Below, piece by piece: positions 865 through 61,297 of a DNA stretch of 64,000 bases. The translations under genes and the position numbers were made by a program. The first letter of the stretch is position 1; each line of letters opens with the position of its first letter. The notes below the pieces were generated by a model. That model was not told the DNA's origin, did not search any database, and saw only the letters and a list, made by a program, of their open reading frames with translations. The stretch spans positions 372,001-436,000 of the IMG/VR virus record IMGVR_UViG_3300036715_004471; one strand, 5' to 3'.

Positions 865-2760
865 TTACTTCACCAAATCTAAGAAGTCTTCTTCTGAAAG
901 AAGGATTGTACCTAACTTACGAGCTGCCACCGCCTTAGAACTAGTACTGTTCGGATCTGCAATTACCAGATAACTTAAACCTTTACTAACTGAATTCTTT
1001 ACGTCTCCGCCAGCATCAGCCGCCATCTTTTCCAAAACAGGTCTTTTGGTTTTCATTGATCCTGTAAAACAAACTGATTTGCTAGTTAAAACGCCCTTGG
1101 CTCTGATTTTGATTTTAACACCATTATCTAGTAATTCCAAGATCAAATCTTGATTTGAAATCAAACCATTTGCCAAAGACTTGGCTTTTACCGGACCCAA
1201 ACCTGGAACTTGTTCAAATTCATCAGCTGATAGTTGTCCAAACTTCTCCAAACTATCACACCCAGCATTCATGATGAGTTTAATAGTGGACTGCCCAATC
1301 ATAGGGATACTTAAAGCTCCAAGGAAAACTTCCAAAGGAACTTCTGCGGCTTGCCACAAAATATCATGACATTTCTGAGCAGATTTCTTGCCCATACGAT
1401 CTATACTAGATAAATCATCGACAGTTAACTCGTATAAGTCAGAAACTTTAACTACCTTACCTGTCCGAACCAATTTCTCAACTAAAGTATCTCCCCACTC
1501 TAATAGGTTGAGTTCTTTAATCCAATTCTTGATTCTGCCCACCACTTGTGCCGAACAAGTTAAACTGTTGGTACAGTTAAGATTTTCTCCAACCATTTCT
1601 ACTAATCCTCCACACTCCGGGCAATTAGTTGGAGCCTGCAATATGGTACCGGTGCTTTTAATCAATTCTTCAACACGCGGAATAACATCATTTGCTCTTG
1701 AGACTAAAACTGTAGCCCCAATATCCAAGCCTAATTCCTGGACATAAGCTAAGTTATATAGACTTGCTCTACTAACAGATGCTCCAACTAAGATCACCGG
1801 ATCTACCGTAGCAACAGGAGTTAATCTTCCGCTATTACCAACCTGCCAAACAATATTTCTAATAACAGACTCTCTAGCCTCATTATCGAATTTGAAAGCA
1901 ATAGCTCCTTTAGGTCTTAAATCTTTATCTCCCAAAGCAGCTTGGATAGCCAGATCGTTCACTCTAACGACCAAACCATCAATATCATAGTCTAATTTAT
2001 CACGCTCAGTGTCTTGATATTGTCTCCAAAAATCGCTTACATATTTAGCGTCATTGAATAGCCAAATATTAGGGGTTTTTAAATTGTGAGATTTCAACCA
2101 AAGCCACTGATCGTGCTCAGAATCAAAATCTACATCTCCCAAAACTTGATAAAATAGAATATCAAGATATTCACTGCCCACACCATCCAGTCTCTTGGAG
2201 ACACCGGAGGCGGCATTTCTGGGATTTGCCTTATCAGCAAAATGGGCTTTATGATTGGTTTTGGTCATAATGATTTCGCCACGCAAAGAGCCAGTAAAAG
2301 GATCTGGCAAATTGTCACAAAAATCATACAATTCTCTCATTACTCCTCCCATGTTAATAACATTAGAAGTAATGTCTTCTCCAATAGTTCCGTCACCACG
2401 GGTAATAGCTTGAACCAATGAACCATATTCATAAATAAGTTCAATACTAAGTCCATCTAACTTTTCAATTACCCATAATTTTTCACCTGGAGCAGTGCTG
2501 TCGACCCATTTAGTCAACTCATCAGGAAGATTAACTTTATCCAAAGATCCCATAGGAATTTGGTGTTTAGCTTTTTTCCATTCTGTTAACGCAACTGGCG
2601 CGCCAACAGCAGTAACAGCAGCGTTTGTGGGATCTAGAATTTTAAGTTCATCAACCCATGCGTCATAAACCTTATCTGAAAAGGTTGATTGACCATTGTA
2701 ATAATCATTACGTGCTTTAGTAATTTTATCTGTTAATTCTTGAATACGTTGCTGTGACAT
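865..2760 (-). CDS. ligA: NAD-dependent DNA ligase
   Basis: KLDGLS adenylation motif, TRGDG, NPRNAASG, OB fold, C4 zinc finger, HhH, BRCT. Confidence 0.97.
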   Translation of the reverse strand: MSQQRIQELTDKITKARNDYYNGQSTFSDKVYDAWVDELKILDPTNAAVTAVGAPVALTEWKKAKHQIPMGSLDKVNLPDELTKWVDSTAPGEKLWVIEKLDGLSIELIYEYGSLVQAITRGDGTIGEDITSNVINMGGVMRELYDFCDNLPDPFTGSLRGEIIMTKTNHKAHFADKANPRNAASGVSKRLDGVGSEYLDILFYQVLGDVDFDSEHDQWLWLKSHNLKTPNIWLFNDAKYVSDFWRQYQDTERDKLDYDIDGLVVRVNDLAIQAALGDKDLRPKGAIAFKFDNEARESVIRNIVWQVGNSGRLTPVATVDPVILVGASVSRASLYNLAYVQELGLDIGATVLVSRANDVIPRVEELIKSTGTILQAPTNCPECGGLVEMVGENLNCTNSLTCSAQVVGRIKNWIKELNLLEWGDTLVEKLVRTGKVVKVSDLYELTVDDLSSIDRMGKKSAQKCHDILWQAAEVPLEVFLGALSIPMIGQSTIKLIMNAGCDSLEKFGQLSADEFEQVPGLGPVKAKSLANGLISNQDLILELLDNGVKIKIRAKGVLTSKSVCFTGSMKTKRPVLEKMAADAGGDVKNSVSKGLSYLVIADPNSTSSKAVAARKLGTILLSEEDFLDLVK

Positions 2761-7244: not shown

Positions 7245-8930
7245 CTATATTGTAATAGTATTCTGCCAATTTTTGTATTTTAATATTTGAGCCGATTCAC
7301 TATAATAATGATCTATGAAATGATGATCCGAATCGCAACATTCATCACACCCTTCACATAAGAAGTTAGAACAAGGATTATGAATTTCTCCCGTATTGGG
7401 ATCAATCATTGGTTTTTTCTTTTTCTTATCATCATATTTGCTGTATTTACTAGGTCCTCTAACCATATACAACTCTTTTTTGGCTCTAGTTACAGCTACA
7501 TAATAAAGATTAGCTTCTTCGCCAGAAACCCCCGGACCGTATCTATAAGTATTTATCAACATAAATACTCTATCACGTTCCAATCCTTTGGCTTTGTGAG
7601 TAGTAGAAAAGATTACTTTTTTATCATCAGCCACATCATTAAAAAGCTTTTCAATAGTTTCCTTGAGATCTTTTAAGGTCAGGGTTCCTTCACACAAGTT
7701 TAACAAACATTCTGCTTTATCTAAACAAGTGGTGGTGTCTTTTTTCTCAGAAAGAAGTCTTTCAATTTCTTGATCTTTCCAAGCATTAACATAAGCTGTG
7801 AAATCTTTGATAGTCTTAGATTTAGATTTCTTAATGAAATAGATTAAGTTAGCTCCAACATCTCGACCTTGAATATTTGCCGGCACGCCAGCCTTTAACA
7901 AAGCCATACAATGTTTAATCAGTGGAGCATTAGTTCTAGATAATACGAAGTCTCCAGGCTTTACCATTTTCAAGAATTCAACAACTTGAATATTTTCAAC
8001 TTTACCTTCTGGAGCATTCGCTGCACACTCAATATCTGGAACTATCTCTTGAGCCAATTTGACTATTTTTTGTGGACAACGATAGGTTACTGATAAAGGT
8101 AACGTTTTGGCTTTTAACTTATTGATGAAATTAGGAATAGCCTCACTATCTGCTCCTCTGAACTGATAAATGCTTTGAGCCGGATCTCCTACTGCAATAA
8201 TTCTTCCATCTATTTTGCAAGCAGAAAGTACCATTGCCATCTGAGCCGCATTTAAGTCCTGCGCTTCATCAACAAATACAACATCAAACTTACCAACATT
8301 CAATCGGTAAACAAACGGAAACCAAATCATATCATCAAAATCTATGACCTGTTTTTGTGTTTTGCACGACGCCAAAACTTTAATGACAATTTGAATAAAC
8401 TTTTCTTTGGTTAATTCAAAGATTTCAATACCAAACTTTTCAATCAACTCTTCAATGCGAGAAGGGGTGTCAAATAAAAACCCTTTACATAAAGAAACGC
8501 ATTTACAAATGCTTTGATTTAGTTCCCATAGATCATAAGAGGTTCCAATTATAGTACCTACAATTGTTCTACACTTATCATTATCTAGGACGACTTCACC
8601 AAAACTTTGTTTGATAGATCTGAATCCTAAAGAATGAAGAGTAAGTACATCTACATACGACGGGGCGCGCTGTTTTAATTCATCAGCAATAGATTTGTTA
8701 AAGGCGACCATTAAGGTTTTTTTACCTTTAGGGATATATCTAAATCCCTCAACGATCGTGCTGGTCTTACCACTACCAGCACGAGCGATGACAACAGTAT
8801 GATCGTTCTCTTTAGCGATATCTTTGAAGATATCTTTCTGATATCTGGACCAATCTCTTTTGGGGTTCGCCTTGACTATATGTGAATTGTCAGGCTTCTT
8901 GGGTGGATATTTATTTGTTTTCTTGGTCAT
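7245..8930 (-). CDS. UvrD/Rep superfamily 1 helicase
   Basis: ARAGSGKT, VDEAQD, VGDPAQSIYQFRGA, TTHKAKGLE, YVAVTRAK. Confidence 0.95.
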   Translation of the reverse strand: MTKKTNKYPPKKPDNSHIVKANPKRDWSRYQKDIFKDIAKENDHTVVIARAGSGKTSTIVEGFRYIPKGKKTLMVAFNKSIADELKQRAPSYVDVLTLHSLGFRSIKQSFGEVVLDNDKCRTIVGTIIGTSYDLWELNQSICKCVSLCKGFLFDTPSRIEELIEKFGIEIFELTKEKFIQIVIKVLASCKTQKQVIDFDDMIWFPFVYRLNVGKFDVVFVDEAQDLNAAQMAMVLSACKIDGRIIAVGDPAQSIYQFRGADSEAIPNFINKLKAKTLPLSVTYRCPQKIVKLAQEIVPDIECAANAPEGKVENIQVVEFLKMVKPGDFVLSRTNAPLIKHCMALLKAGVPANIQGRDVGANLIYFIKKSKSKTIKDFTAYVNAWKDQEIERLLSEKKDTTTCLDKAECLLNLCEGTLTLKDLKETIEKLFNDVADDKKVIFSTTHKAKGLERDRVFMLINTYRYGPGVSGEEANLYYVAVTRAKKELYMVRGPSKYSKYDDKKKKKPMIDPNTGEIHNPCSNFLCEGCDECCDSDHHFIDHYYSESAQILKYKNWQNTITI

Positions 8931-8941
8931 AGTACTCGAAT

Positions 8942-9904
8942 TTACATTTTGCTATGTACTTTGGCGTTTTGTTTTAACATATATGGATAGTATCCGTTTT
9001 CGTCTGGTTTATCAAGACCATCTTCCTCGGACTCCATCTCTCGCTTCATAATAACACAGGTTGCCGCCTCTAGCAATTTTTTATGAATATCGAGGTCCTG
9101 ATTTTGGCTGCCCTTGCCACTTTGTGGGTGCCAAAACTTTCTGGCACGCATTATTGTGATTTGGAAATGAGACATTTCCCATAGCGGATTACACCATGCT
9201 TGAACTCTGGCATCATCAAATGGAACTCCAGCCTCAATTAGCTCAACAAACTTGGTTCTCAAGATATGAATTAATTCGTTATCTCTATGATGAGCGTAGA
9301 AAATATCAGCCGTTGCCATTCTGCAAAATAATCTTGTTTTGTCATCTCCGTGCGGTAAATTCGCAAAATGTGATAAAGATTGCTCATACCACTCTTTAAG
9401 TTCTTCTATGAAGATAGTTTTTTCAGGCTTATATTGGAATTCTGGTTCAGTATAATGTACACCAATTGGATTAAATTCCATTATAGATTGATATACTTCT
9501 TCCAAAACATACATAATACCAAGCGTTCTATTTTTTCGACAAAGAGTGCTATATTTCGCTGCGTCTCTTTCGACGCCATTCAAAACATCAGCCAATTTAA
9601 GCTTGCTAGTATCTGGAATGTTATATCTTGATTTATCTTCACCATCTATTGACCAACCTTCTTTAAGAAGATCAAGCATAAGATGAGTTGTTTCATTCTC
9701 GACGATATTTTCCATTCCGCCATAATCATCATAAGTGCCTGGAACAGAAATGCCTAGCGGCATCCATTCATCGTACGGATAATAATTTCCGCCTCCCCGC
9801 ACTTTGCCTTTATAAGTATTATCTACTAAGATAAAAGCACGAATCTTATCTCCGCTATTGATTGGGAGTTGAGTAATCCCGCAACTTTCATTCCATGATC
9901 CCAA
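8942..9904 (-). CDS. hypothetical protein
   Basis: 320-aa ORF; GTYDDYG motif. Confidence 0.6.
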   Translation of the reverse strand: MGSWNESCGITQLPINSGDKIRAFILVDNTYKGKVRGGGNYYPYDEWMPLGISVPGTYDDYGGMENIVENETTHLMLDLLKEGWSIDGEDKSRYNIPDTSKLKLADVLNGVERDAAKYSTLCRKNRTLGIMYVLEEVYQSIMEFNPIGVHYTEPEFQYKPEKTIFIEELKEWYEQSLSHFANLPHGDDKTRLFCRMATADIFYAHHRDNELIHILRTKFVELIEAGVPFDDARVQAWCNPLWEMSHFQITIMRARKFWHPQSGKGSQNQDLDIHKKLLEAATCVIMKREMESEEDGLDKPDENGYYPYMLKQNAKVHSKM

Positions 9905-12803: not shown

Positions 12804-14192
12804 TTATTTTGTACGTTCTCTGATTCTTTCCAGAGAATCATCAATCAGTAGTTCTCCATTTTCATAGACAGTCTTTAACGCCGAGAATTCGTTAGCATTC
12901 TCGCTATCGGACAAAGAAATTGTCTGCCAAATTCCGTTTGGCCATTTTACCAAATCTAATCTACCTGGTTTGGACTTTTTGCCGTGATCGGTGATTGGGT
13001 CTTTGAAGACTGGTCTGGTTTTACCATCGACCGTAATAGATGAACATTTCATGGCGAATTTAAGAGTATCTCTATTCAAACCCTGAATTAAAGCCCCGCC
13101 CATTCCAAATCCTACATTGGTGGCAGAATAGCCATAATTCAACAGATTTTCTAGAATTGCCCCAATAGAATGCTCATCAACACCATCGCCCTGAATAACC
13201 CTTACATTATTCAAGACTTTATATCCCTTTGTATTGGTAGTGCTACCAAACTTACTATCCAAAATCTGAACAGTTTTCAACACTACATCAGGGGGATTTC
13301 CGCTGTCTGGTCTAATAACCACTGTAGCGCCAGAATCAATTACTTCCTGTTTTAACTGCCCACCCCATAATTTCTCGCAGGCATTATACAAATCATAAGA
13401 GTCAGAAACACAAGCAACCATCGATCCGGGTTTCGCGAACTGGTTCAGCATATTTCTATAAGCTTCAGCTTCATTCTCTTTACCCCAACTGGTAATCGAA
13501 GAGTGTTCCGATGCAGGGATACTAAATCCTGACATAGGACAATTATAGTATTCGTTAGCGCAGAGAACTCCTGCTGCCGTATCTGAACCTAAGAAATTGA
13601 CTAAATGAGCAGCATCACCAATCATTGCTGATTCCTGACTGCTATTTCCTCTGGCTCCGAATCCATGCAGCTTGAAGTTAATCTCTGCGGCAGGATCATC
13701 AGATGACTTGTTCAAAGCATCAAGAATAATCTGTTTAATTGTATAGCTGCGTGTGGCTACTGTAATTGGATACCAAATCCTAAGTAACATAGTTTCTAGC
13801 CATGAAACAATCCAAAATACGTTTGGATCTGTGGATTCAATACTAACTAGAATGTTGTGACCCGAAACGACTGTTCCTTCCGGAACCGCACGAATTCTAA
13901 CAGGAAGTTTGCCGCCTAATTCTTTGGCAATATACATCCAGCCTTCATAGTTGAAAGGCTCTCCGTGAGCAGTCCAAAACTCTCTAGCTCTTTCTACTTC
14001 TTCTACGGTTACGCGATGCGATAGATACTCTTTCAGATAATACTGTAAGCCGAAAAATACTGTCTTATCATATTCTCCGCCACGACTTTCGATATAACTA
14101 AACATCGAAGTGGTCCCCGGCGGATACTGAAGATAATGCGAAACCTTGTATGAATCAGTATCAAAGAGATAGCTAAATCTAATTGTTTTCAT
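12804..14192 (-). CDS. nadV: nicotinamide phosphoribosyltransferase
   Basis: TDSYKVSH, SIPASEHS, VSDSYD, IRPDSG, IQGDG, RDTLKFAMK. Confidence 0.95.
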   Translation of the reverse strand: MKTIRFSYLFDTDSYKVSHYLQYPPGTTSMFSYIESRGGEYDKTVFFGLQYYLKEYLSHRVTVEEVERAREFWTAHGEPFNYEGWMYIAKELGGKLPVRIRAVPEGTVVSGHNILVSIESTDPNVFWIVSWLETMLLRIWYPITVATRSYTIKQIILDALNKSSDDPAAEINFKLHGFGARGNSSQESAMIGDAAHLVNFLGSDTAAGVLCANEYYNCPMSGFSIPASEHSSITSWGKENEAEAYRNMLNQFAKPGSMVACVSDSYDLYNACEKLWGGQLKQEVIDSGATVVIRPDSGNPPDVVLKTVQILDSKFGSTTNTKGYKVLNNVRVIQGDGVDEHSIGAILENLLNYGYSATNVGFGMGGALIQGLNRDTLKFAMKCSSITVDGKTRPVFKDPITDHGKKSKPGRLDLVKWPNGIWQTISLSDSENANEFSALKTVYENGELLIDDSLERIRERTK

Positions 14193-21499: not shown

Positions 21500-21856
21500 T
21501 TAGTTGATTGATACCACTACTGCGGCACCAACATCTGATACGTGGGAGGCTCTATTATCCGTTAGATAACGAGATAATGTTTCCACCGGATTCTCTGGTA
21601 GAGGATTCTCTACAATGAATTTTTCTGCTAACTCTCTCAAAGCTACAGTTAAGTCCGGATTATGAACCGAACAAACTACTTCCTTCTCACCAGAAACCCA
21701 ACGAACAATAGAAACGTAATACGTTTCACGTGCGCGAGATAACCAAGCAACAGTTAGTCCTGGCGCAGTACCATCAGATTGGTACGCGAAGTTAATAGCC
21801 TTGGTGATCTTATCAATTAACGTTTGTGTGTCCATTTTACTTATCTCTCCATTCAA
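21500..21856 (-). CDS. hypothetical protein
   Basis: ORF coupled to tsf. Confidence 0.55.
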   Translation of the reverse strand: MNGEISKMDTQTLIDKITKAINFAYQSDGTAPGLTVAWLSRARETYYVSIVRWVSGEKEVVCSVHNPDLTVALRELAEKFIVENPLPENPVETLSRYLTDNRASHVSDVGAAVVVSIN

Positions 21857-22841
21857 AATTTGAATTATTTAAAACGCCTTTTTCAAAATTTGGATCTGGC
21901 GTAGCAGGAACACCTGACAACTTAGCAACTTCATCAGAGAAATTGCCTTTAGTTTGCTGTTCTATTCCTTCACCAACTTGACAACGAATGAAATTCACAA
22001 TCTCAATCTTGCCACCTAATTGAGCTGCATATTGTGTGTCAATAAGTTGCTCTATACTTTTCTTAGGAACCACTACTGATTCCTGTTTAGTCAAACAAAC
22101 CTCAGTATACCATTTATTAAGCTTGCCTTCAATAATTCTAGCCCATTGTACTTGAGGTTTTCCAAGCCCTTCTACTTGAGCTTGAAAAATATCTTTTTGT
22201 CGATTAAGCACATCTTCTGGTAACTTATCTGGTGATATTGCTATCGGATTCATTGCCACAATTTGCATTGCTAAATCGTAACCAATTTGTGCAAATGCTT
22301 CTGAATTAGCAATTTCTACAGATGGAGCTTTCAATGTAACTATTGAAGCTAGTTTATCAGCAGGATGATGTACATATCCAAACACGCGACACGTGTCGTC
22401 GATGGGCTCCTCGATCCACCAACGATTGAATACGCATTTTTCTTTAACTTTAGCAGACAATTCTGTTTGTGCCGTAAGCGCCTCACCATTTGTTAATTTA
22501 TCGAATGGTAATCCCACCACATGAACTGCGGCAATACTAAACCACACTTCTTCCGCGAACCCTCTAAATTCCGGGCTTCTAGCTACAAAATCAGTTTCAC
22601 AATTTACTTCTAACATCAAAACAGCTTTACTACCAACTGGTAATTGTACAGGTCCCGCCAATACAATACCTTCAGCGGCGATTTTACCCTCTCTACCAGA
22701 AACAATATTCTGTCCCTTGGTTTTGATAATATCAACGGCTTTTTGTAGATCATCGCCCGCCTCTTTCAAAGCATCATTACAATCTTTCATACCAGCTTGG
22801 GTAAGGGCGCGTAATTCTTTTAATAATTCTGATTTATTCAT
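21837..22841 (-). CDS. tsf: translation elongation factor Ts
   Basis: LRALTQAGMKDC..AL, AAEG, EVNCETDFVAR, AMQIVAMNP. Confidence 0.95.
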   Translation of the reverse strand: MNKSELLKELRALTQAGMKDCNDALKEAGDDLQKAVDIIKTKGQNIVSGREGKIAAEGIVLAGPVQLPVGSKAVLMLEVNCETDFVARSPEFRGFAEEVWFSIAAVHVVGLPFDKLTNGEALTAQTELSAKVKEKCVFNRWWIEEPIDDTCRVFGYVHHPADKLASIVTLKAPSVEIANSEAFAQIGYDLAMQIVAMNPIAISPDKLPEDVLNRQKDIFQAQVEGLGKPQVQWARIIEGKLNKWYTEVCLTKQESVVVPKKSIEQLIDTQYAAQLGGKIEIVNFIRCQVGEGIEQQTKGNFSDEVAKLSGVPATPDPNFEKGVLNNSNFEWRDK

Positions 22842-39690: not shown

Positions 39691-40042
39691 TGGAAGAGTT
39701 ATTCTATAATCCGGGTTCTGTTATTTCAAACAATCATTAATCTTGGCGAATAGTCACCTATTCGCTCCAGCACCAACCCGTAAACATCGGGCGAGTAACC
39801 CTCAAACGTTTACTATTTGGCTTGCTTCAAATGGGGTTTGCCGTGCCATGTTTGTTACCAAACATGCGGTGGGCTCTTACTCCACCATTTCACCCTTACC
39901 GGAAGCCGAAGCTTCTTAGGCGGTATCTTTCTGTTGCACTTTCCGTCGTGTCACCACGCCCAGCCGTTAACTGGCATTCTACTCTACGAAGCCCAGAATT
40001 TCCTCAGTCTTGCGACCGCGATTGCTCAAACAACTCTTTCCA
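39691..40042 (-). ncRNA. rnpB: RNase P RNA, bacterial type A
   Basis: GAGGAAATTCTGGG, GGAAAGTGCAACAGAAA, GGTAAGGGTGAAA, GGCAAACCCC, ACAGAACCCGGATTA; P1 closes the ends. Confidence 0.93.
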
Positions 40043-46945: not shown

Positions 46946-47194
46946 TCAATGGAAAACCCATAAGTTAGAATTCAAAATCTTTTTCAACTCTGCATAAATC
47001 TTGTCTATGCAACCACGACAATAATATCCTAAAATACCAGGTTCAGTGCCACCTGCCCCATATACAGTAATGGTTGCACAAGTTGTACCCTTTTTTATTT
47101 TGCCATTTTCTCCAACATATTGAGGATCTTTATCACATTCATGATAACGACATTTTTTTCTACCAGACTTATCTACTTCTAGTCCAACTCTCAT
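46946..47194 (-). CDS. Cys-rich hypothetical protein, ends LWVFH
   Basis: Cys pairs; shared C-terminal motif. Confidence 0.5.
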   Translation of the reverse strand: MRVGLEVDKSGRKKCRYHECDKDPQYVGENGKIKKGTTCATITVYGAGGTEPGILGYYCRGCIDKIYAELKKILNSNLWVFH

Positions 47195-47487
47195 TCTGAA
47201 AGCATCCTTTCCAAACGAGCGTGAAGTCTTTCAGCTTCATATCTAGTCAAAGCAATAAGCGCATCTTCTTCAACAGCTTTTGCGCCTACTTCCATGATTT
47301 GATCGTCCCAATTACTGTATCGGAAATCTTCAAAATCTTCTTTTGAATCTGGTCCCTCTACAGAATAAGAATCTTCAATAGTTTGAAGAGGAGTATTGAC
47401 GTTAACAACATGAATGTAAAAAATCTTATTCTTACTTGAAGAATCTTTTGCTTTATGTCTTTTCACAACACACCATTTAATAAAAAT

Positions 47488-47633
47488 TGAAACAACAAGA
47501 ATTGGAAAGACTATTTTTCGCGTGTTACCATTACACCACACTGCAATGTTTAATTTCTTGGTTGCAGTGGAGGGAATCGGACCCCCTTCTCGTTCTTATA
47601 ATGAAATGTAATCCTTCACAGGCATTTGTTTCA
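47488..47633 (-). ncRNA. Y-RNA-like (YrlA-type) RNA 1 with permuted tRNA domain
   Basis: TGAAACAA/TTGTTTCA closing stem; AATGC..GAAGGATTACAT; T-arm, CACTGCA-ACCA-loop-TGCAGTG, D-arm. Confidence 0.8.
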
Positions 47634-47755
47634 TGGTCTCTCAAGTAGGGTTTACGCCTACAACATCCCTTTAATTCAGGAGTTTTACACATTACTTTTC
47701 ATAATTAAGTTAAGTTAACTGCCCTTAATATGAATTTCACTTAAACTATCGAGAG
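47634..47755 (-). ncRNA. tRNA-like RNA with about 45-nt hairpin inserted in the D-loop
   Basis: CTCTCGA/TTGAGAG-ACCA; GTAGG-CGTAAAC-CCTAC. Confidence 0.55.
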
Positions 47756-47758
47756 ATA

Positions 47759-47833
47759 TGGAGGGTTCGGAGGGACTTGAACCCTCAACAAACTGGTTAA
47801 AAGCCAGCTACTCTGCCATTGAGTTACGAACCC
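47759..47833 (-). tRNA. tRNA-Lys(TTT)
   Basis: GCTGG-CTTTTAA-CCAGT; TCCA. Confidence 0.92.
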
Positions 47834-48951: not shown

Positions 48952-49045
48952 TGTGGATACACAGGGAATCGAACCCTACGCTAGCCTGCTTTCGACTCCT
49001 TTCTACCCACCTTGGTAGGTGGACAATGGCGGGCTCTCTATACCC
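48952..49045 (-). ncRNA. D-armless tRNA-like RNA with Ala identity elements
   Basis: GGGTATA/TGTATCC-A (G3-U70); T-arm TAGGG-TTCGATT-CCCTG. Confidence 0.65.
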
Positions 49046-49049
49046 AAGT

Positions 49050-49127
49050 TGGTGGACACATTGGGAGTCGAACCCAATTTTTCCCGACAATTGTCCGAGC
49101 TTTTCATAGGGACGGGTTACTGTGCCC
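49050..49127 (-). ncRNA. D-armless tRNA-like RNA with Ala identity elements
   Basis: GGGCACA/TGTGTCC-ACCA (G3-U70); T-arm TTGGG-TTCGACT-CCCAA. Confidence 0.7.
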
Positions 49128-49334
49128 AAAATCTTAAACACTAAAAATGAGTACGATATCTTCTCCGCCTTCCTTAATAAAAGCATCATAACTCATACTA
49201 CACGGAGCGTTGAACCAAACATAATTGTTATTATCAATAGTCCATGTCAACTTTCTATCAGGATTAAATCTAACTTCTTTATCATCTTCCATGATATAAG
49301 TGCCAAATTTGTCCATCTTGATCTGTCTTTTCAT

Positions 49335-49494: not shown

Positions 49495-49499
49495 ATGTT

Positions 49500-49574
49500 G
49501 TAGTTTAATAAGGGCTCGAACCTTAATATATTTTTGTATATCGTTTCCACGAGTACTCATAAACATTAAACTAC
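49500..49574 (-). ncRNA. tRNA-like RNA, T-arm on a 9-bp terminal stem
   Basis: GTAGTTTAA/TTAAACTAC; TAAGG-TTCGAGC-CCTTA. Confidence 0.55.
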
Positions 49575-50897: not shown

Positions 50898-50973
50898 TGG
50901 CTCATCCCCTCAGATTCGAACTGAGATATCACGAGTTAACAGCCCGCCTCACGACCAATTGTGATAAGGATGA
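50898..50973 (-). tRNA. tRNA-Asn(GTT)
   Basis: GCGGG-CTGTTAA-CTCGT; GCCA. Confidence 0.9.
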
Positions 50974-50975
50974 AT

Positions 50976-51124
50976 ATATTGACGAGAATTGTAAAGATTC
51001 GCTGCGCCCTGCACTTTTGTCTTGCGACCCACTTGTGCTACCACTCATGCGAGTCTTTGAGTGGATGGGATTCGATACCCATACCATCGAGCATTTTCTA
51101 TGTAATCCTTAACGTATTCACTAT
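50976..51124 (-). ncRNA. Y-RNA-like RNA 2 with permuted tRNA domain
   Basis: GAATACG.TAAGGATTACAT; T-arm, CCACTCA/TGAGTGG, D-arm; CAATTCTCGT. Confidence 0.75.
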
Positions 51125-51126
51125 CA

Positions 51127-51776: not shown

Positions 51777-51850
51777 TCAAAATACGTCAGGAATCGAACC
51801 TGAACTGTGGGGTGATTACCCCAATCCTGCCCTTAGACGACATATTTTGA
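51777..51850 (-). ncRNA. anticodon-less tRNA
   Basis: Normal D and T arms; GGGGT-AATC-ACCCC; 10-bp terminal stem; no CCA. Confidence 0.7.
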
Positions 51851-52189: not shown

Positions 52190-52197
52190 ATTCTTAA

Positions 52198-52345
52198 AGA
52201 CAACAAAAATTGAAAGTTATCACGCCTTTCGGCTTCAACGCGTTTGCCTTTTCGCCACCACCAACAGTAAGTCGATGGGAGGGACTCGAACCCTCAAACC
52301 TTTTCAGATATTGATTTTAATATGTAAACCTTCTGACATTTGTCT
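52198..52345 (-). ncRNA. Y-RNA-like RNA 4 with permuted tRNA domain
   Basis: AGACAAATGTCAGAAGGTTTACAT; GAGGG-TTCGAGT-CCCTC; CCATCGAC/GTTGGTGG; D-arm; CAATTTTTGTTGTCT. Confidence 0.8.
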
Positions 52346-52354
52346 AGAAGAAGC

Positions 52355-53160: not shown

Positions 53161-53236
53161 TGGAGTCGAAAGTAGGAATCGAACCTACTGTGACAGTTTT
53201 GCAGACTGTTCCTCAAAGCCATCGAGGACTTTCGAC
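53161..53236 (-). tRNA. tRNA-Cys(GCA)
   Basis: ACAGT-CTGCAAA-ACTGT; TCCA. Confidence 0.88.
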
Positions 53237-53288
53237 TTATCAAGGCTCTCGCCTTGGTCCAACCACCGAAGTGAATTGGGGGATGTTA

Positions 53289-53350
53289 GACGACAAAAAT
53301 TGAATAAGATGTTGTTTATCCTAAAATGTAATCCTATTCTAGCATTCGTC
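53289..53350 (-). ncRNA. Y-RNA-like RNA 6 (minimal)
   Basis: GACGAATGCTAGAATAGGATTACAT...ATCTTATTCAATTTTTGTCGTC. Confidence 0.75.
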
Positions 53351-53351
53351 A

Positions 53352-54600: not shown

Positions 54601-54605
54601 ATATC

Positions 54606-54710
54606 GTATTGACGAATATTGAAGAAATTTTTTCCTGTCACCGGACATCACGGAGTCGAACCGTCACGGATTGTTTCCTATACAATGTAATTCCCTCGAG
54701 CATTCAATAC
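54606..54710 (-). ncRNA. Y-RNA-like RNA 7 (T-arm only)
   Basis: GTATTGAATGCTCGAGGGAATTACAT; ACGG-TTCGACT-CCGT; CAATATTCGTCAATAC. Confidence 0.75.
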
Positions 54711-54799
54711 AAACTTTTTAAAATCTGTGTATCTACTATATCATCTTATTGATATGTTGGAACGTTTTTTGTTTTCTTTCGTCGTCCCAGGTGACTCAT

Positions 54800-59734: not shown

Positions 59735-61297
59735 TCAGATTTGAACAGACTCAATGGTTGAGACCCATAGGTCTTTGTTGTTACCAAGTTCAAGGAACTT
59801 TGCAATTACATCAAAAACTTGATCACTAAAACCACCTACGTTAAGGATATTCTCCTTATCGTAAGCTTGAGTAGAGGTATTCGGAGTAAGATCAATACAA
59901 ACAAGCTTTGCTTTCTTGTTACGAGCTTTGAACTCAGTCCAAGCTTTCATCGTAGCGGTACCACGACTTCTGCCTGAATCAACCCAAGACTCGTTATCGC
60001 TTACATAAATGACTAGATCGCCCATGGCTTTTCTACGATTCAACTCTTCCATTGGAAGCGAACAGTTAGTGCCACCTCCGCCAAATCCTGCTAGGATCTT
60101 GGCGTTAGTCATAATTGAATCCATTGGATTCAGCTTATGAGCATGAACTCTAGTATCGAATGGTAATACTTCTACATCAGAATTTCTGCGCATAATAGCT
60201 GCGGCAACCAGGGCTGCCACATCAATACAACGCATCTTGCTGGATACATTTCCACGATTTCCGGTGACCGGAGAATTCATGGATCCAGAAGTATCTACCA
60301 TTACATAAACCTTTTTGTTTTCAAACTCTGGAATGTTCTCCAACGCATGCTCAGCAGCCTTTTGCAAAGCTACAGAAACCTTAGCAGGAACACTTGCATC
60401 CATATTCAAAAACGTAGTGAACAACTGGTACGGGAATACCTTTGCTCTCTTAACTTGCTCCTTATCCTCCAACTTGGCACAGATAAGCCCTAACAGATCA
60501 CGATCTGCTAACACATTATGACGAGCAAATGTGTTAAGGTTCTGTCTAATCTGGTTCCAAGTTGCATTGACTGCAATCTTTTTCCAGTGTTCAGCAGTCA
60601 ATGGTAAAGCCGTAAGCTTTTGGAAAGGTACATGCGGGATTTCTTTTGACATATCTTTCTTGAAGTCTTCAAACTGCTTAACTAGAGCACACAAGTCTTC
60701 CTTTGCATACTCCTTATCTAGCAAGTACCCAAATATAGCAGAACGTTGCTTATTGGTTGGCTTCGGATGAACCAACTTGATGATATCTTGCAATGACGGA
60801 TCATTACCAACATCTGCCGCAAACAACTGCTCATCATTCAAAGATTCCAAATACTTTTGGATTAATCTTTTAGGGCGAGTACCTAAAGACTTACGTCCAG
60901 TAGCCCCTGAACGAATAACCTGCACGAAATTTCTCAACATCTTTGGAGAATCAACTACCTTATCAAAGATTTTGGACAAAAGCTCGGAGTCCTTTCCAGC
61001 AACTACCGCAGCCAAAACCGCAGGCATATCTTTCATTAAACCCTCTTGACGAGAGTATACTGCCAAGCGAGCAACGTACTCAGCCGGCAACTTGTTAGCT
61101 AACTCTAACACTTTCTTAAGTTGATCTTCATCAGATACATAATATGTTCCGTTAAAACAACCAGTCATAGCTAATTGAGCCAATGCGGCTTTGTCAGACA
61201 AACTATAAGCTTGTCCACCAGCATTGTTAACTACATTGGTCGGCTTTACAGCCTTTGAAGACACAAACTTGCTAGCAAATAATTTCTTTGATGACAT
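59735..61297 (-). CDS. rsr: Ro60/TROVE RNA-binding protein with vWA domain
   Basis: NNAGGQAY, LAQLAMTG, GRKSLG, VHPKP, VFPYQL, VDTSGSM, GGTNCSLP, SDNESW. Confidence 0.93.
   Translation of the reverse strand: MSSKKLFASKFVSSKAVKPTNVVNNAGGQAYSLSDKAALAQLAMTGCFNGTYYVSDEDQLKKVLELANKLPAEYVARLAVYSRQEGLMKDMPAVLAAVVAGKDSELLSKIFDKVVDSPKMLRNFVQVIRSGATGRKSLGTRPKRLIQKYLESLNDEQLFAADVGNDPSLQDIIKLVHPKPTNKQRSAIFGYLLDKEYAKEDLCALVKQFEDFKKDMSKEIPHVPFQKLTALPLTAEHWKKIAVNATWNQIRQNLNTFARHNVLADRDLLGLICAKLEDKEQVKRAKVFPYQLFTTFLNMDASVPAKVSVALQKAAEHALENIPEFENKKVYVMVDTSGSMNSPVTGNRGNVSSKMRCIDVAALVAAAIMRRNSDVEVLPFDTRVHAHKLNPMDSIMTNAKILAGFGGGGTNCSLPMEELNRRKAMGDLVIYVSDNESWVDSGRSRGTATMKAWTEFKARNKKAKLVCIDLTPNTSTQAYDKENILNVGGFSDQVFDVIAKFLELGNNKDLWVSTIESVQI

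What the first reader, a model, noticed from the sequence alone, without database searches (positions are those of the whole stretch)
47488..47633. Y-like RNA 1 keeps ACCA in its acceptor loop
Seen: T-arm, CACTGCA-ACCA, 13-nt AT-rich spacer, TGCAGTG-TG, D-arm (GTGT-AATGGTA-ACAC). This is the layout of a tRNA 3' half, a spacer and a tRNA 5' half. RNAs 2 and 4 have shorter loops with no CCA. Inference: a snapshot of YrlA origin from tandem tRNA genes. RNase P cleavage plus trimming could give a two-piece, chargeable, Ro-tethered RNA.
Basis: partly seen in the sequence, partly recalled or inferred. Interest (0 to 1): 0.62.

Follow-up and report, generated by a model that had tools for sequence, protein, structure and literature searches.

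The report
Phage Y RNA with encoded CCA
A huge phage encodes a Ro-binding Y RNA whose tRNA-like part carries, inside its "acceptor" hairpin, the same 3' end (ACCA) and 5' cut-site signature as the phage's own tRNA genes. It is therefore probably cut into a two-piece tRNA mimic, as was shown by experiment for one mycobacterial Y RNA.

Summary
Window 47484-47633 (- strand) is a YrlA-type Y RNA. It has a Ro-binding closing helix, a T arm, a 7-bp acceptor hairpin and a D arm. It sits in a tRNA array of a 446-kb phage that also encodes Ro60, an RNase P RNA, RtcB and a CCA-adding-family enzyme.

The hairpin loop reads ACCA, then a 13-nt spacer ending in AT. Both ends match this clade's tRNA genes: 167 of 181 encode CCA, and 134 of 181 have AT just before +1.

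A covariance model found the same design in related huge phages. Ten of 17 distinct tRNA-module Y RNAs have NCCA exactly after a 7-bp stem. The stems differ between them in a compensating way. Spacers range from 3 to about 93 nt, are unrelated in sequence, and mostly end in AT. Other paralogues have tight closed loops.

Near-identical orthologues differ only between ACCA and AT. This argues that the spacer is removed by RNase P plus 3' trimming.

The principle is known: M. smegmatis YrlA is cut by RNase P and gains CCA (Chen 2014). The tandem-tRNA origin model is also published.

New here are the encoded CCA and spacer, and their conservation across a phage clade. The "snapshot of origin" idea is not supported. 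Cleavage and charging are untested, because no RNA data exist.

The parts
47484..47633 (-). Y-like RNA 1 (YrlA-type, CCA-type acceptor loop), whole gene as matched
   Evidence: Model R1 gives 192 bits on its own training sequence. Rfam YrlA matches its full length 1-114 at 25.7 bits. Fold.
47609..47632 (-). 5' strands of the closing (Ro-binding) helices, with the AACAAAUGC motif. This corresponds to the YrlA GNCGAAN0-1G motif; the G-to-A change is compensated on the 3' strand.
   Evidence: Rfam alignment. Family alignment and covariation. Motif named in PMC4201824.
47570..47586 (-). T arm: 5-bp stem and loop TCCGATT, with C at tRNA position 55
   Evidence: tRNA genes of the clade have T at position 55 in 162 of 167 cases.
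47563..47569 (-). Acceptor-stem 3' strand, CACTGCA
   Evidence: All 7 acceptor pairs covary across the family.
47559..47562 (-). Discriminator A plus encoded CCA
   Evidence: NCCA stands at this place in 10 of 17 distinct relatives.
47546..47558 (-). 13-nt spacer ending in AT. Predicted to be excised: RNase P would cut between 47546 and 47545, and the rest would be trimmed back to CCA.
   Evidence: Orthologues replace 47548-47558 with 32 or 90 unrelated nucleotides while the flanks stay 87-99% identical. AT precedes +1 in 134 of 181 tRNA genes of the clade.
47539..47545 (-). Acceptor-stem 5' strand, TGCAGTG
47522..47536 (-). D arm, GTGT / AATGGTA / ACAC. It keeps A14, G18, G19 and A21, and is preceded by U8-G9.
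   Evidence: The closest tRNA D arms are those of the phage tRNA-Leu genes.
47489..47513 (-). 3' strands of the closing (Ro-binding) helices, containing CUUGUUGU
47634..47756 (-). Uncalled tRNA-like element directly upstream. It starts 3 nt (TAT) after the CCA of tRNA-Lys and ends in a 7-nt acceptor strand plus ACCA, 2 nt before RNA 1.
   Evidence: Sequence and fold. In the orthologues L028 and L030 a normal tRNA 3' end plus CCA stands at the same place.
47759..47833 (-). tRNA-Lys(ttt), the upstream member of the same array
59735..61297 (-). Ro60 orthologue (TROVE plus Ro60 vWA domains), the presumed protein partner
   Evidence: Pfam vWA_Ro60 E 1.1e-18 and TROVE E 1.7e-7, both above their cut-offs
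39691..40037 (-). Phage-encoded bacterial type A RNase P RNA, the candidate cutting enzyme
   Evidence: Rfam RF00010, 288 bits, full length. Also present in all 5 related huge phages tested.
52192..52346 (-). Paralogous Y-like RNA with a closed acceptor hairpin (5-7-nt loop, no CCA), lying between tRNA-Pro and tRNA-Lys
50971..51125 (-). Paralogous Y-like RNA with a closed acceptor hairpin (10-nt loop, no CCA)
54601..54711 (-). Y-like RNA with the Ro-binding helix and a T arm only; abuts tRNA-Arg
53282..53351 (-). Short Y-like RNA with the Ro-binding helix only; abuts tRNA-Gln

Best explanation
RNA 1 is a YrlA-type Y RNA of a 446-kb phage. It is transcribed within the phage's tRNA array and bound by the phage Ro60 through its closing helix.

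Its tRNA-like module is built as a circularly permuted tRNA whose acceptor hairpin loop is a real processing cassette. That cassette consists of a discriminator A with encoded CCA, a disposable spacer, and the AT that precedes +1 in this phage's tRNA genes.

Inferred mechanism:
1. RNase P (the phage RNase P RNA with a host protein subunit, or the host enzyme) cuts between 47546 and 47545.
2. The 13-nt trailer is trimmed back to CCA, as happens for tRNAs with encoded CCA. A phage CCA-adding-family enzyme is available for repair.
3. A 75-nt piece ending in ACCA and a 60-nt piece stay joined. They are held by the 7-bp acceptor stem, the two closing helices and Ro60.

The product mimics tRNA more completely than closed YrlAs do, because it has a free acceptor end. 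It would present that end, tethered to Ro60, to some tRNA-binding factor.

Shown here: the anatomy, the family membership features, and the conservation and covariation.

Inferred, not shown: transcription, cleavage, trimming, Ro binding and the effector.
For: 1. Anatomy and YrlA resemblance.
2. Ro60 gene, RNase P RNA, RtcB and a PolyA_pol-family enzyme are in the same genome.
3. The clade's tRNA genes encode CCA in 167 of 181 cases. AT precedes +1 in 134 of 181, and T stands at -1 in 155 of 181.
4. At least 11 distinct full-length Y RNAs from related huge phages share one design: a 7-bp stem, then NCCA (one has ACTA), then a spacer of 3 to about 93 nt, then a complementary 5' strand. In 9 of the 11 the spacer ends in AT. 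Their stems are all different. All 7 acceptor pairs show compensatory change.
5. The trait is two-state. Paralogues either have NCCA...AT or have tight loops (GAAA, 5-10 nt) with neither.
6. Window versus L030: the flanks are 73/74 and 58/59 identical, but the 11 nt between ACCA and AT are replaced by 90 unrelated nt. L028 has 32 nt there. A contig from an independent study replaces exactly 47548-47558 with 90 nt.
7. Some orthologues have lost the D arm but keep the T arm, acceptor and CCA (L027, L023).
8. The Y RNAs abut tRNAs, so they share the array's processing.
9. The two predicted pieces cofold into the same architecture, about 20 kcal/mol more stable than the separate pieces.
10. Precedent: M. 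smegmatis YrlA, with a 7-bp acceptor, is cut by RNase P in vitro and in vivo. Its 5' half gains CCA, and both halves co-precipitate with Rsr (PMC4201824).
Against: - There is no RNA evidence at all. No RNA run holds the locus, so expression, ends and cleavage are untested.
- CCA is not universal in the class. One orthologue has ACTA (L027), and the G001 orthologue of a CCA-type RNA has the loop TCATTAT.
- Several loops are only 7 nt (ACCATAT), which may be poor RNase P substrates while closed.
- Close orthologues are about 95% identical outside the spacer, so within that subgroup the kept ACCA alone says little.
- The Rfam YrlA score is far below the gathering score.
- No RNase P protein gene was found in the phage.
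- The non-U55 T loop could weaken the elbow that RNase P recognises.
Confidence: 0.62

Rival explanations
1. It is an uncut, closed-loop YrlA-type Y RNA. On this view the ACCA and the AT in the loop are inherited leftovers of a tRNA-tRNA junction (or of recombination with tRNA arrays). They have no processing role, and the loop simply tolerates insertions.
For: - Most characterised YrlAs are closed loops and are not cut by RNase P.
- CCA has decayed in two relatives (ACTA, TCATTAT).
- There are no RNA data.
- Cultured-phage relatives have closed loops without CCA (Mx1 and a Streptomyces phage).
Against: - NCCA and the terminal AT persist although every acceptor stem and every spacer has been replaced.
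- The indel boundaries fall exactly at CCA| and |AT.
- CCA-type stems are always 7 bp.
- The module is not being refreshed from tRNA genes, because its T loop (C or G at 55) is almost absent from them.
- Paralogues that really are closed have tight loops instead.
Confidence: 0.25
2. It is a circularly permuted tRNA gene. Its transcript would be circularised (for example by the phage RtcB) and then opened at the acceptor to give a working tRNA, as in red algae and Thermofilum.
For: - The order 3' half, CCA, spacer, 5' half matches permuted tRNA genes.
- RtcB is encoded in the genome.
- The resemblance is noted in the literature.
Against: - The closing helices are the same conserved module found in short Y RNAs that have no tRNA part, and they align to the Ro-binding part of Rfam YrlA.
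- No anticodon stem-loop can be drawn.
- No bulge-helix-bulge motif or splicing endonuclease is known in bacteria.
- Some orthologues lack a D arm.
Confidence: 0.03
3. It is a two-piece (permuted) tmRNA-like gene.
For: Local matches to the beta_tmRNA and tmRNA_permuted models over the T arm, CCA, spacer and 5' acceptor (19.4 and 17.7 bits).
Against: - The matches cover only the shared tRNA-like junction and lie far below the gathering scores (84 and 47).
- At 150 nt there is no room for a tag reading frame or pseudoknots.
- ARAGORN calls no tmRNA.
Confidence: 0.02
4. It is a chance junction of two tRNA pseudogene halves, or a false-positive tandem tRNA pair.
For: Tandem tRNA junctions do score partially with YrlA-like models. 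Two such partial hits were seen (L009:15604 and L025:17608). Chen et al. warn of this.
Against: - No tRNA call overlaps RNA 1 or its full-length relatives except by 1-3 nt at their edges.
- The two acceptor strands are complementary to each other.
- The closing helices covary.
Confidence: 0.02

Closest known systems
Mycobacterium smegmatis YrlA (Chen et al. 2014, RNA 20:1715, PMC4201824)
   Same: A Ro60/Rsr-associated Y RNA with a T arm, a 7-bp acceptor-like stem and a D arm. In M. smegmatis it is cut by RNase P at the tRNA +1 position. The 5' half then ends in CCA, and both halves stay with Rsr. This is exactly the fate predicted here.
   Different: - In M. smegmatis only part of the CCA is encoded; CA is added after nibbling. 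Here the full ACCA is encoded, followed by a spacer of variable length (3 to about 93 nt) and a tRNA-type AT leader.
- The host here is a huge phage with its own RNase P RNA, and the RNA sits in a tRNA array 12 kb from Ro60.
- Position 55 of the T loop is C.
- Cleavage is not shown here.
Salmonella Typhimurium YrlA / Rfam RF02553 (closed-loop YrlA; structure in Wang et al. 2018, bioRxiv 10.1101/312249)
   Same: Overall layout: Ro-binding closing helix, variable region, T arm, acceptor-like hairpin and D arm. The conserved AAUGC and CUUGU helix motifs align.
   Different: - The Salmonella stem is 6 bp and closed, with no CCA, and RNase P does not cut it.
- RNA 1 scores only 25.7 bits against a gathering score of 69.
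- The 5' motif is CAAAUG, not CGAAUG, with a compensating change on the 3' strand.
Two-piece tmRNA from permuted ssrA genes (Rfam RF04321, RF01850)
   Same: Gene order: T arm, acceptor 3' strand, CCA, disposable intervening segment, acceptor 5' strand. The mature RNA is two base-paired pieces with a free CCA end.
   Different: No tag reading frame, no pseudoknots and no SmpB context. The rest of the molecule is a Ro-binding helix.
Circularly permuted tRNA genes (Cyanidioschyzon, green algae, Thermofilum; cited)
   Same: The 3' half lies upstream of the 5' half, and the acceptor is first closed and then opened by RNase P / RNase Z.
   Different: Those mature through a circular intermediate into real tRNAs with anticodons. 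Here there is no anticodon arm and the ends form a Ro-binding helix.

Membership tests
YrlA-type bacterial/phage Y RNA (Chen 2014; Rfam RF02553) | Encoded near a Ro60 (TROVE) orthologue | tested here: met
   The Ro60 ORF at 59735-61297 (-) is on the same strand, 12 kb upstream. This is farther than the 4-kb rule used by Chen et al.. In all related phages, however, the Y RNAs cluster within about 4-12 kb downstream of Ro60.
YrlA-type bacterial/phage Y RNA (Chen 2014; Rfam RF02553) | 5' and 3' ends pair into a helix carrying the conserved Ro-binding motif (GNCGAAN0-1G on the 5' strand) | tested here: inconclusive
   The helix is present and covaries. Many paralogues carry GACGAAUGC, which fits the motif. 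RNA 1 itself has AACAAAUGC, with a compensating change on the 3' strand. Ro binding is not testable here.
YrlA-type bacterial/phage Y RNA (Chen 2014; Rfam RF02553) | T arm 5' of a D arm, with an acceptor-like stem-loop between them, and tRNA tertiary nucleotides | tested here: met
   U8, A14, G18, G19, A21, C56 and A58 are present. Position 55 is C instead of U.
YrlA-type bacterial/phage Y RNA (Chen 2014; Rfam RF02553) | Reaches the Rfam gathering score (69 bits) | tested here: not met
   25.7 bits, although the match covers the model's full length. The model was built mostly on closed-loop bacterial YrlAs, and the 17-nt loop costs score.
RNase P-processed, CCA-ended YrlA (M. smegmatis type) | Seven-base-pair acceptor stem stacked on a 5-bp T stem | tested here: met
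   CACTGCA pairs with TGCAGTG (7 bp) directly after the 5-bp T stem. All CCA-type relatives also have 7 bp.
RNase P-processed, CCA-ended YrlA (M. smegmatis type) | Cleavage by RNase P at +1, and a 3' CCA on the 5' half in vivo | not testable with these tools
   No RNA run holds the locus. The only support is comparative.
Permuted tRNA gene | Ends form an anticodon stem / bulge-helix-bulge that is ligated into an anticodon loop | tested here: not met
   The ends form the Y RNA helix shared with Y RNAs that lack any tRNA part. No anticodon arm can be drawn.
Two-piece tmRNA | Tag reading frame and pseudoknots; reaches the Rfam gathering score | tested here: not met
   17.7 and 19.4 bits against gathering scores of 47 and 84, covering the tRNA-like junction only. 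ARAGORN finds no tmRNA.

The most novel reading that the evidence does not exclude
The CCA-type Y RNAs of this huge-phage clade may be matured into two-piece RNAs whose free acceptor end is aminoacylated or otherwise engaged by the translation or tRNA-repair machinery (a synthetase, EF-Tu or the CCA-adding enzyme). The phage would then deploy a Ro60-tethered, anticodon-less 'tRNA' during infection, for example to couple Ro60 surveillance to its own large tRNA set or to divert a host tRNA-directed factor. RNA 1 has A73 and a tRNA-Leu-like D arm. From memory, these are the features LeuRS uses without reading the anticodon.
Probability: 0.12. Interest if true: 0.85.

Novelty: new variant of a known kind. 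Interest (0 to 1): 0.55.

Why it matters
So far only one Y RNA (M. smegmatis YrlA) is known to be opened by RNase P and to end in CCA, and it has been unclear whether that is an oddity.

Here a whole clade of huge phages keeps the cut-site cassette (NCCA, spacer, AT) hard-wired in some of its Y RNAs, while keeping closed-loop paralogues beside them. That argues the open, CCA-ended form has a function of its own.

It also gives a natural series for testing what the free acceptor end does: spacers from 3 to about 93 nt, variants with and without a D arm, and variants with and without CCA.

Finally, it ties phage Ro60/Y RNA biology to the phages' own tRNA-processing kit (RNase P RNA, a CCA-adding-family enzyme and RtcB).

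Tried and rejected
- Rfam at gathering thresholds gave nothing at the site. Only the E-value mode found YrlA, well below its cut-off.
- Megablast of 6 kb against named phages gave no match.
- The hand-written scans for a T arm followed by a hairpin were too noisy genome-wide. A covariance model replaced them.
It was rebuilt from a shorter alignment.
- MAFFT misaligned the closed-loop paralogue. That alignment was not used.
- RNA evidence: no RNA run holds the locus. Laying DNA contigs gave only one further spacer variant, plus a contig that skips the tRNA module. That contig is probably a short paralogue from another phage.
- An IMG/VR pattern scan that did not include CCA found RNA 1-type genes only in the phage contigs already found by the earlier searches. 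The other 15 hits were coding sequence or ordinary tRNAs.
- A narrower 5'-motif scan found only the same four loci.
- Cultured relatives have closed loops without CCA (Myxococcus phage Mx1 and Streptomyces phage Blueeyedbeauty), so they are not CCA-type.
- The idea of recent descent from a particular tRNA was rejected. The best matches, to tRNA-Leu genes, are only partial.
- The permuted-tRNA and tmRNA readings were rejected (see the rival explanations).
- The Sim and Wolin 2018 review is not held. Its model is cited through the 2018 preprint.
- No protein complex or structure prediction was run, because no claim here rests on one.

Full report
**Context.** The window is bases 372001-436000 of a 446,541-bp IMG/VR virus record, 38.7% G+C. 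ARAGORN tRNA genes in the window and 56 in the genome, all on the - strand. The window also holds:
- a full-length bacterial type A RNase P RNA at 39691-40037 (288 bits);
- EF-Ts, an NAD-dependent ligase and NAMPT;
- a 520-aa Ro60 orthologue at 59735-61297, with Ro60 vWA E 1e-18 and TROVE E 2e-7.

Elsewhere the genome encodes RtcB and a PolyA_pol (CCA-adding family) protein, but no RnpA protein was detected.

The best DNA-holding runs (shares 0.21-0.98) are microbial-mat, aquatic and sediment metagenomes; runs with shares of 0.05-0.08 include soil, wastewater and lake water. None is RNA.

**Observation.**
- T arm, 47586-47570
- CACTGCA, 47569-47563
- ACCA, 47562-47559
- a 13-nt A/T-rich spacer, 47558-47546
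- TGCAGTG, 47545-47539
- TG
- D arm, 47536-47522

Two closing helices formed by the 5' and 3' ends enclose the whole. The minimum-free-energy fold gives the same picture. Its z-score is only -1.5, so thermodynamics alone is weak evidence.

Rfam's YrlA model aligns end to end at 47486-47632 (25.7 bits against a gathering score of 69). This includes the AAUGC and CUUGU motifs of the Ro-binding helix. The permuted-tmRNA models match only the T arm, CCA, spacer and acceptor junction.

**How the loop compares with the phage's tRNA genes.** In this genome 48 of 56 ARAGORN calls end in an encoded CCA. The 8 exceptions look like doubtful calls. Across the clade's loci:
- 167 of 181 tRNA genes encode CCA;
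- the discriminator is A in 100 of those 167;
- the two leader bases before +1 are AT in 134 of 181;
- position -1 is T in 155 of 181.

Tandem tRNAs are often separated by only 3 nt (CAT, AAT, ATC). The loop of RNA 1, A-CCA followed by 11 nt and then AT, therefore reads exactly like one of this phage's inter-tRNA spacers.

**Relatives.** Ro60-based and pattern-based scans of IMG/VR gave 19 and 4 loci. A covariance model (150 positions, 32 pairs) was built from RNA 1 and two orthologues. It found 48 matches at E below 0.005 in these loci.

Apart from two partial hits that are plain tandem-tRNA junctions, the matches do not overlap tRNA genes. Many abut them by 0-3 nt.

On the resulting alignment 93.6% of cells pair, against 66.8% in shuffles and 39-51% with slid partners. 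In 28 of 32 pairs both sides change, including all 7 acceptor pairs. That alignment is fitted to the model, so the count leans somewhat towards the structure.

**Four grades of Y RNA in the family**:
1. Short RNAs with the Ro-binding helix only (window 53282-53351).
2. Helix plus T arm (window 54601-54711).
3. Full tRNA module with a tight closed acceptor loop (window 52192-52346 and 50971-51125; a GAAA tetraloop in L025).
4. Full module with NCCA, a spacer and a complementary 5' strand. RNA 1 belongs here.

**The CCA-type class.** At least eleven distinct RNAs share the design, each with a different acceptor stem. Seven of the pairs are CACTGCA/TGCAGTG, TACAGCA/TGCTGTA, CGGCCCG/CGGGACG, ACCTGCA/TGCAGGT, CACTGCT/AGCAGTG, ATTCGGC/GCCGAAT and TGCGGGT/GCCCGCA. 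All the stems are 7 bp.
- Ten carry NCCA and one carries ACTA.
- An additional orthologue in G001 has TCATTAT.
- Spacers after CCA are 3, 3, 12, 13, 14, 14, 15, 27, 34, about 85, 92 and about 93 nt. They are mostly unrelated in sequence, and most end in TAT or CAT.

With a background chance of about 0.012 per RNA for CCA at a fixed place, 10 of 17 gives P of about 1e-15. That figure ignores relatedness. However, stems and spacers have turned over completely, so simple inheritance does not explain the conservation.

The closest orthologues make the boundary explicit. Window and L030 are 73/74 and 58/59 identical on either side, but have 11 versus 90 unrelated nucleotides between ACCA and AT. 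L028 has 32. A contig from an independent aquatic study replaces exactly 47548-47558 with 90 letters.

Two orthologues have lost the D arm yet keep the T arm, the acceptor stem and ACCA or ACTA. [quoted passage not shown]

**Mechanism.** The most economical reading is that the loop is a processing cassette. RNase P cuts before TGCAGTG, and the trailer is trimmed to CCA as for the neighbouring tRNAs. The 75-nt and 60-nt pieces then stay together. Cofolding keeps the same architecture and is about 20 kcal/mol more stable than the separate pieces.

All five related huge phages tested also carry a type A RNase P RNA.

Cleavage, trimming, Ro binding and any aminoacylation are inferred. None could be tested here.

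**What is known.** Chen et al. 2014 (PMC4201824) showed the following for M. smegmatis YrlA, which has a 7-bp acceptor stem:
- M1 RNA cuts it in vitro at the predicted site.
- In vivo it exists as 82-nt and 65-nt halves.
- The 82-nt half carries an added CA that completes CCA.
- Both halves co-precipitate with Rsr.

They raised possible aminoacylation only as speculation. They saw no cleavage of the Salmonella or Deinococcus RNAs.

Wang et al. 2018 (bioRxiv 10.1101/312249) describe most YrlAs as closed, circularly permuted tRNA mimics. They cite the model that YrlA arose from dimeric tRNA transcripts.

I did not find an encoded NCCA with a spacer and tRNA-type leader in the papers read, in Myxococcus phage Mx1 (Ro60 48% identical; closed 4-nt loop) or in a Streptomyces phage. 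I also did not find its conservation across a phage clade beside closed-loop paralogues.

**Against a 'snapshot of origin'.**
- The design is shared across phages whose Ro60 proteins are 66-94% identical to this one.
- Neither half closely matches any tRNA of the genome.
- Nearly all CCA-type Y RNAs have C or G at T-loop position 55. Of 167 tRNA genes in the clade, 162 have T there.

The module is thus a specialised, maintained element, not a recent fusion, and it is not being refreshed from tRNA genes.

**Verdict.** It is a new variant of a known kind, the RNase P-processed YrlA. Confidence is about 0.9 that it is a YrlA-type Y RNA, about 0.6 that it is cut to a CCA-ended two-piece form, and about 0.1 that it is charged.

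Noticed in passing
window 39691-40037 (-); also G001-G005: The phage encodes a full-length bacterial type A RNase P RNA (288 bits). All five related huge phages tested have one too (247-308 bits), each near the Ro60/tRNA/Y RNA region. No RNase P protein (PF00825) was found in this genome. My limited paper search found no report of phage-encoded RNase P RNA.
   Followed up: partly
window 48955-49130 (-): Two tandem tRNA-like elements that ARAGORN and Rfam do not call. Each has a good T arm and a 7-bp acceptor. The first ends TGTGTCC-ACCA, then a 4-nt spacer, and the second begins GGGTATA. The 3' strand of the first can also pair with the 5' strand of the second through G-U pairs. This is a tandem arrangement of the kind invoked for the origin of YrlA.
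   Followed up: partly
window 47634-47756 (-) and 49495-49574 (-): Two further uncalled tRNA-like elements with paired acceptor strands and a T arm but aberrant or expanded middles. The first ends in ACCA 2 nt before RNA 1. In orthologous loci a normal tRNA stands there.
   Followed up: partly
window 50971-51125, 52192-52346, 53282-53351, 54601-54711 (-); related loci L009-L030: There are at least five Y-like RNAs in the window, in four structural grades: helix only; helix plus T arm; closed tRNA module; CCA-type module. Most directly abut tRNA genes, so they are probably released from polycistronic tRNA transcripts by the tRNA-processing enzymes.
   Followed up: partly
T loops of CCA-type Y RNAs, e.g. 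window 47575-47581 (-): CCA-type Y RNAs have TCCGA or TGCGA T loops, with C or G at tRNA position 55 where tRNAs carry pseudouridine. Closed-loop paralogues and 162 of 167 tRNA genes have T there. The meaning is unknown. It would prevent the usual pseudouridine 55.
   Followed up: partly
L030 6440-6530 (-), L024 18200-18300, L025 17090-17180: The long spacers (about 85-93 nt) inside the acceptor loop are not random filler in every case. Those of L024 and L025 share a CACTCGAA..GAGTG hairpin. Whether these inserts are small mobile or structured elements was not examined.
   Followed up: no
window 47518-47606 (run X4): A sediment-metagenome contig joins 47518 to 47606, so it matches the Ro-binding helix strands but skips the whole tRNA module. 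It is most likely a short Y RNA paralogue of another phage aligned at 80% likeness.
   Followed up: no
window 21837-22841 (-), 12804-14192 (-), 865-2760 (-); G000 8546-9850 and 260626-261018: The phage carries EF-Ts, NAMPT and an NAD-dependent DNA ligase in the window. Outside the window it carries RtcB RNA ligase and a PolyA_pol (CCA-adding family) nucleotidyltransferase. Together these form a broad translation and RNA-repair kit.
   Followed up: partly
window 51778-51848 (-), 53161-53237 (-): ARAGORN calls a 71-nt tRNA with a 2-nt 'anticodon' between two tRNA-Pro genes. A tRNA-Cys(gca) just reaches the Rfam tRNA-Sec gathering score (47.2 against 47). Both are probably artefacts or odd tRNAs.
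   Followed up: no
window 47191-47541 (-): The mechanical ORF with a GTG start overlaps the 3' half of RNA 1. Its first 45 or so residues look non-coding, so any real gene probably starts downstream of the RNA.
   Followed up: no
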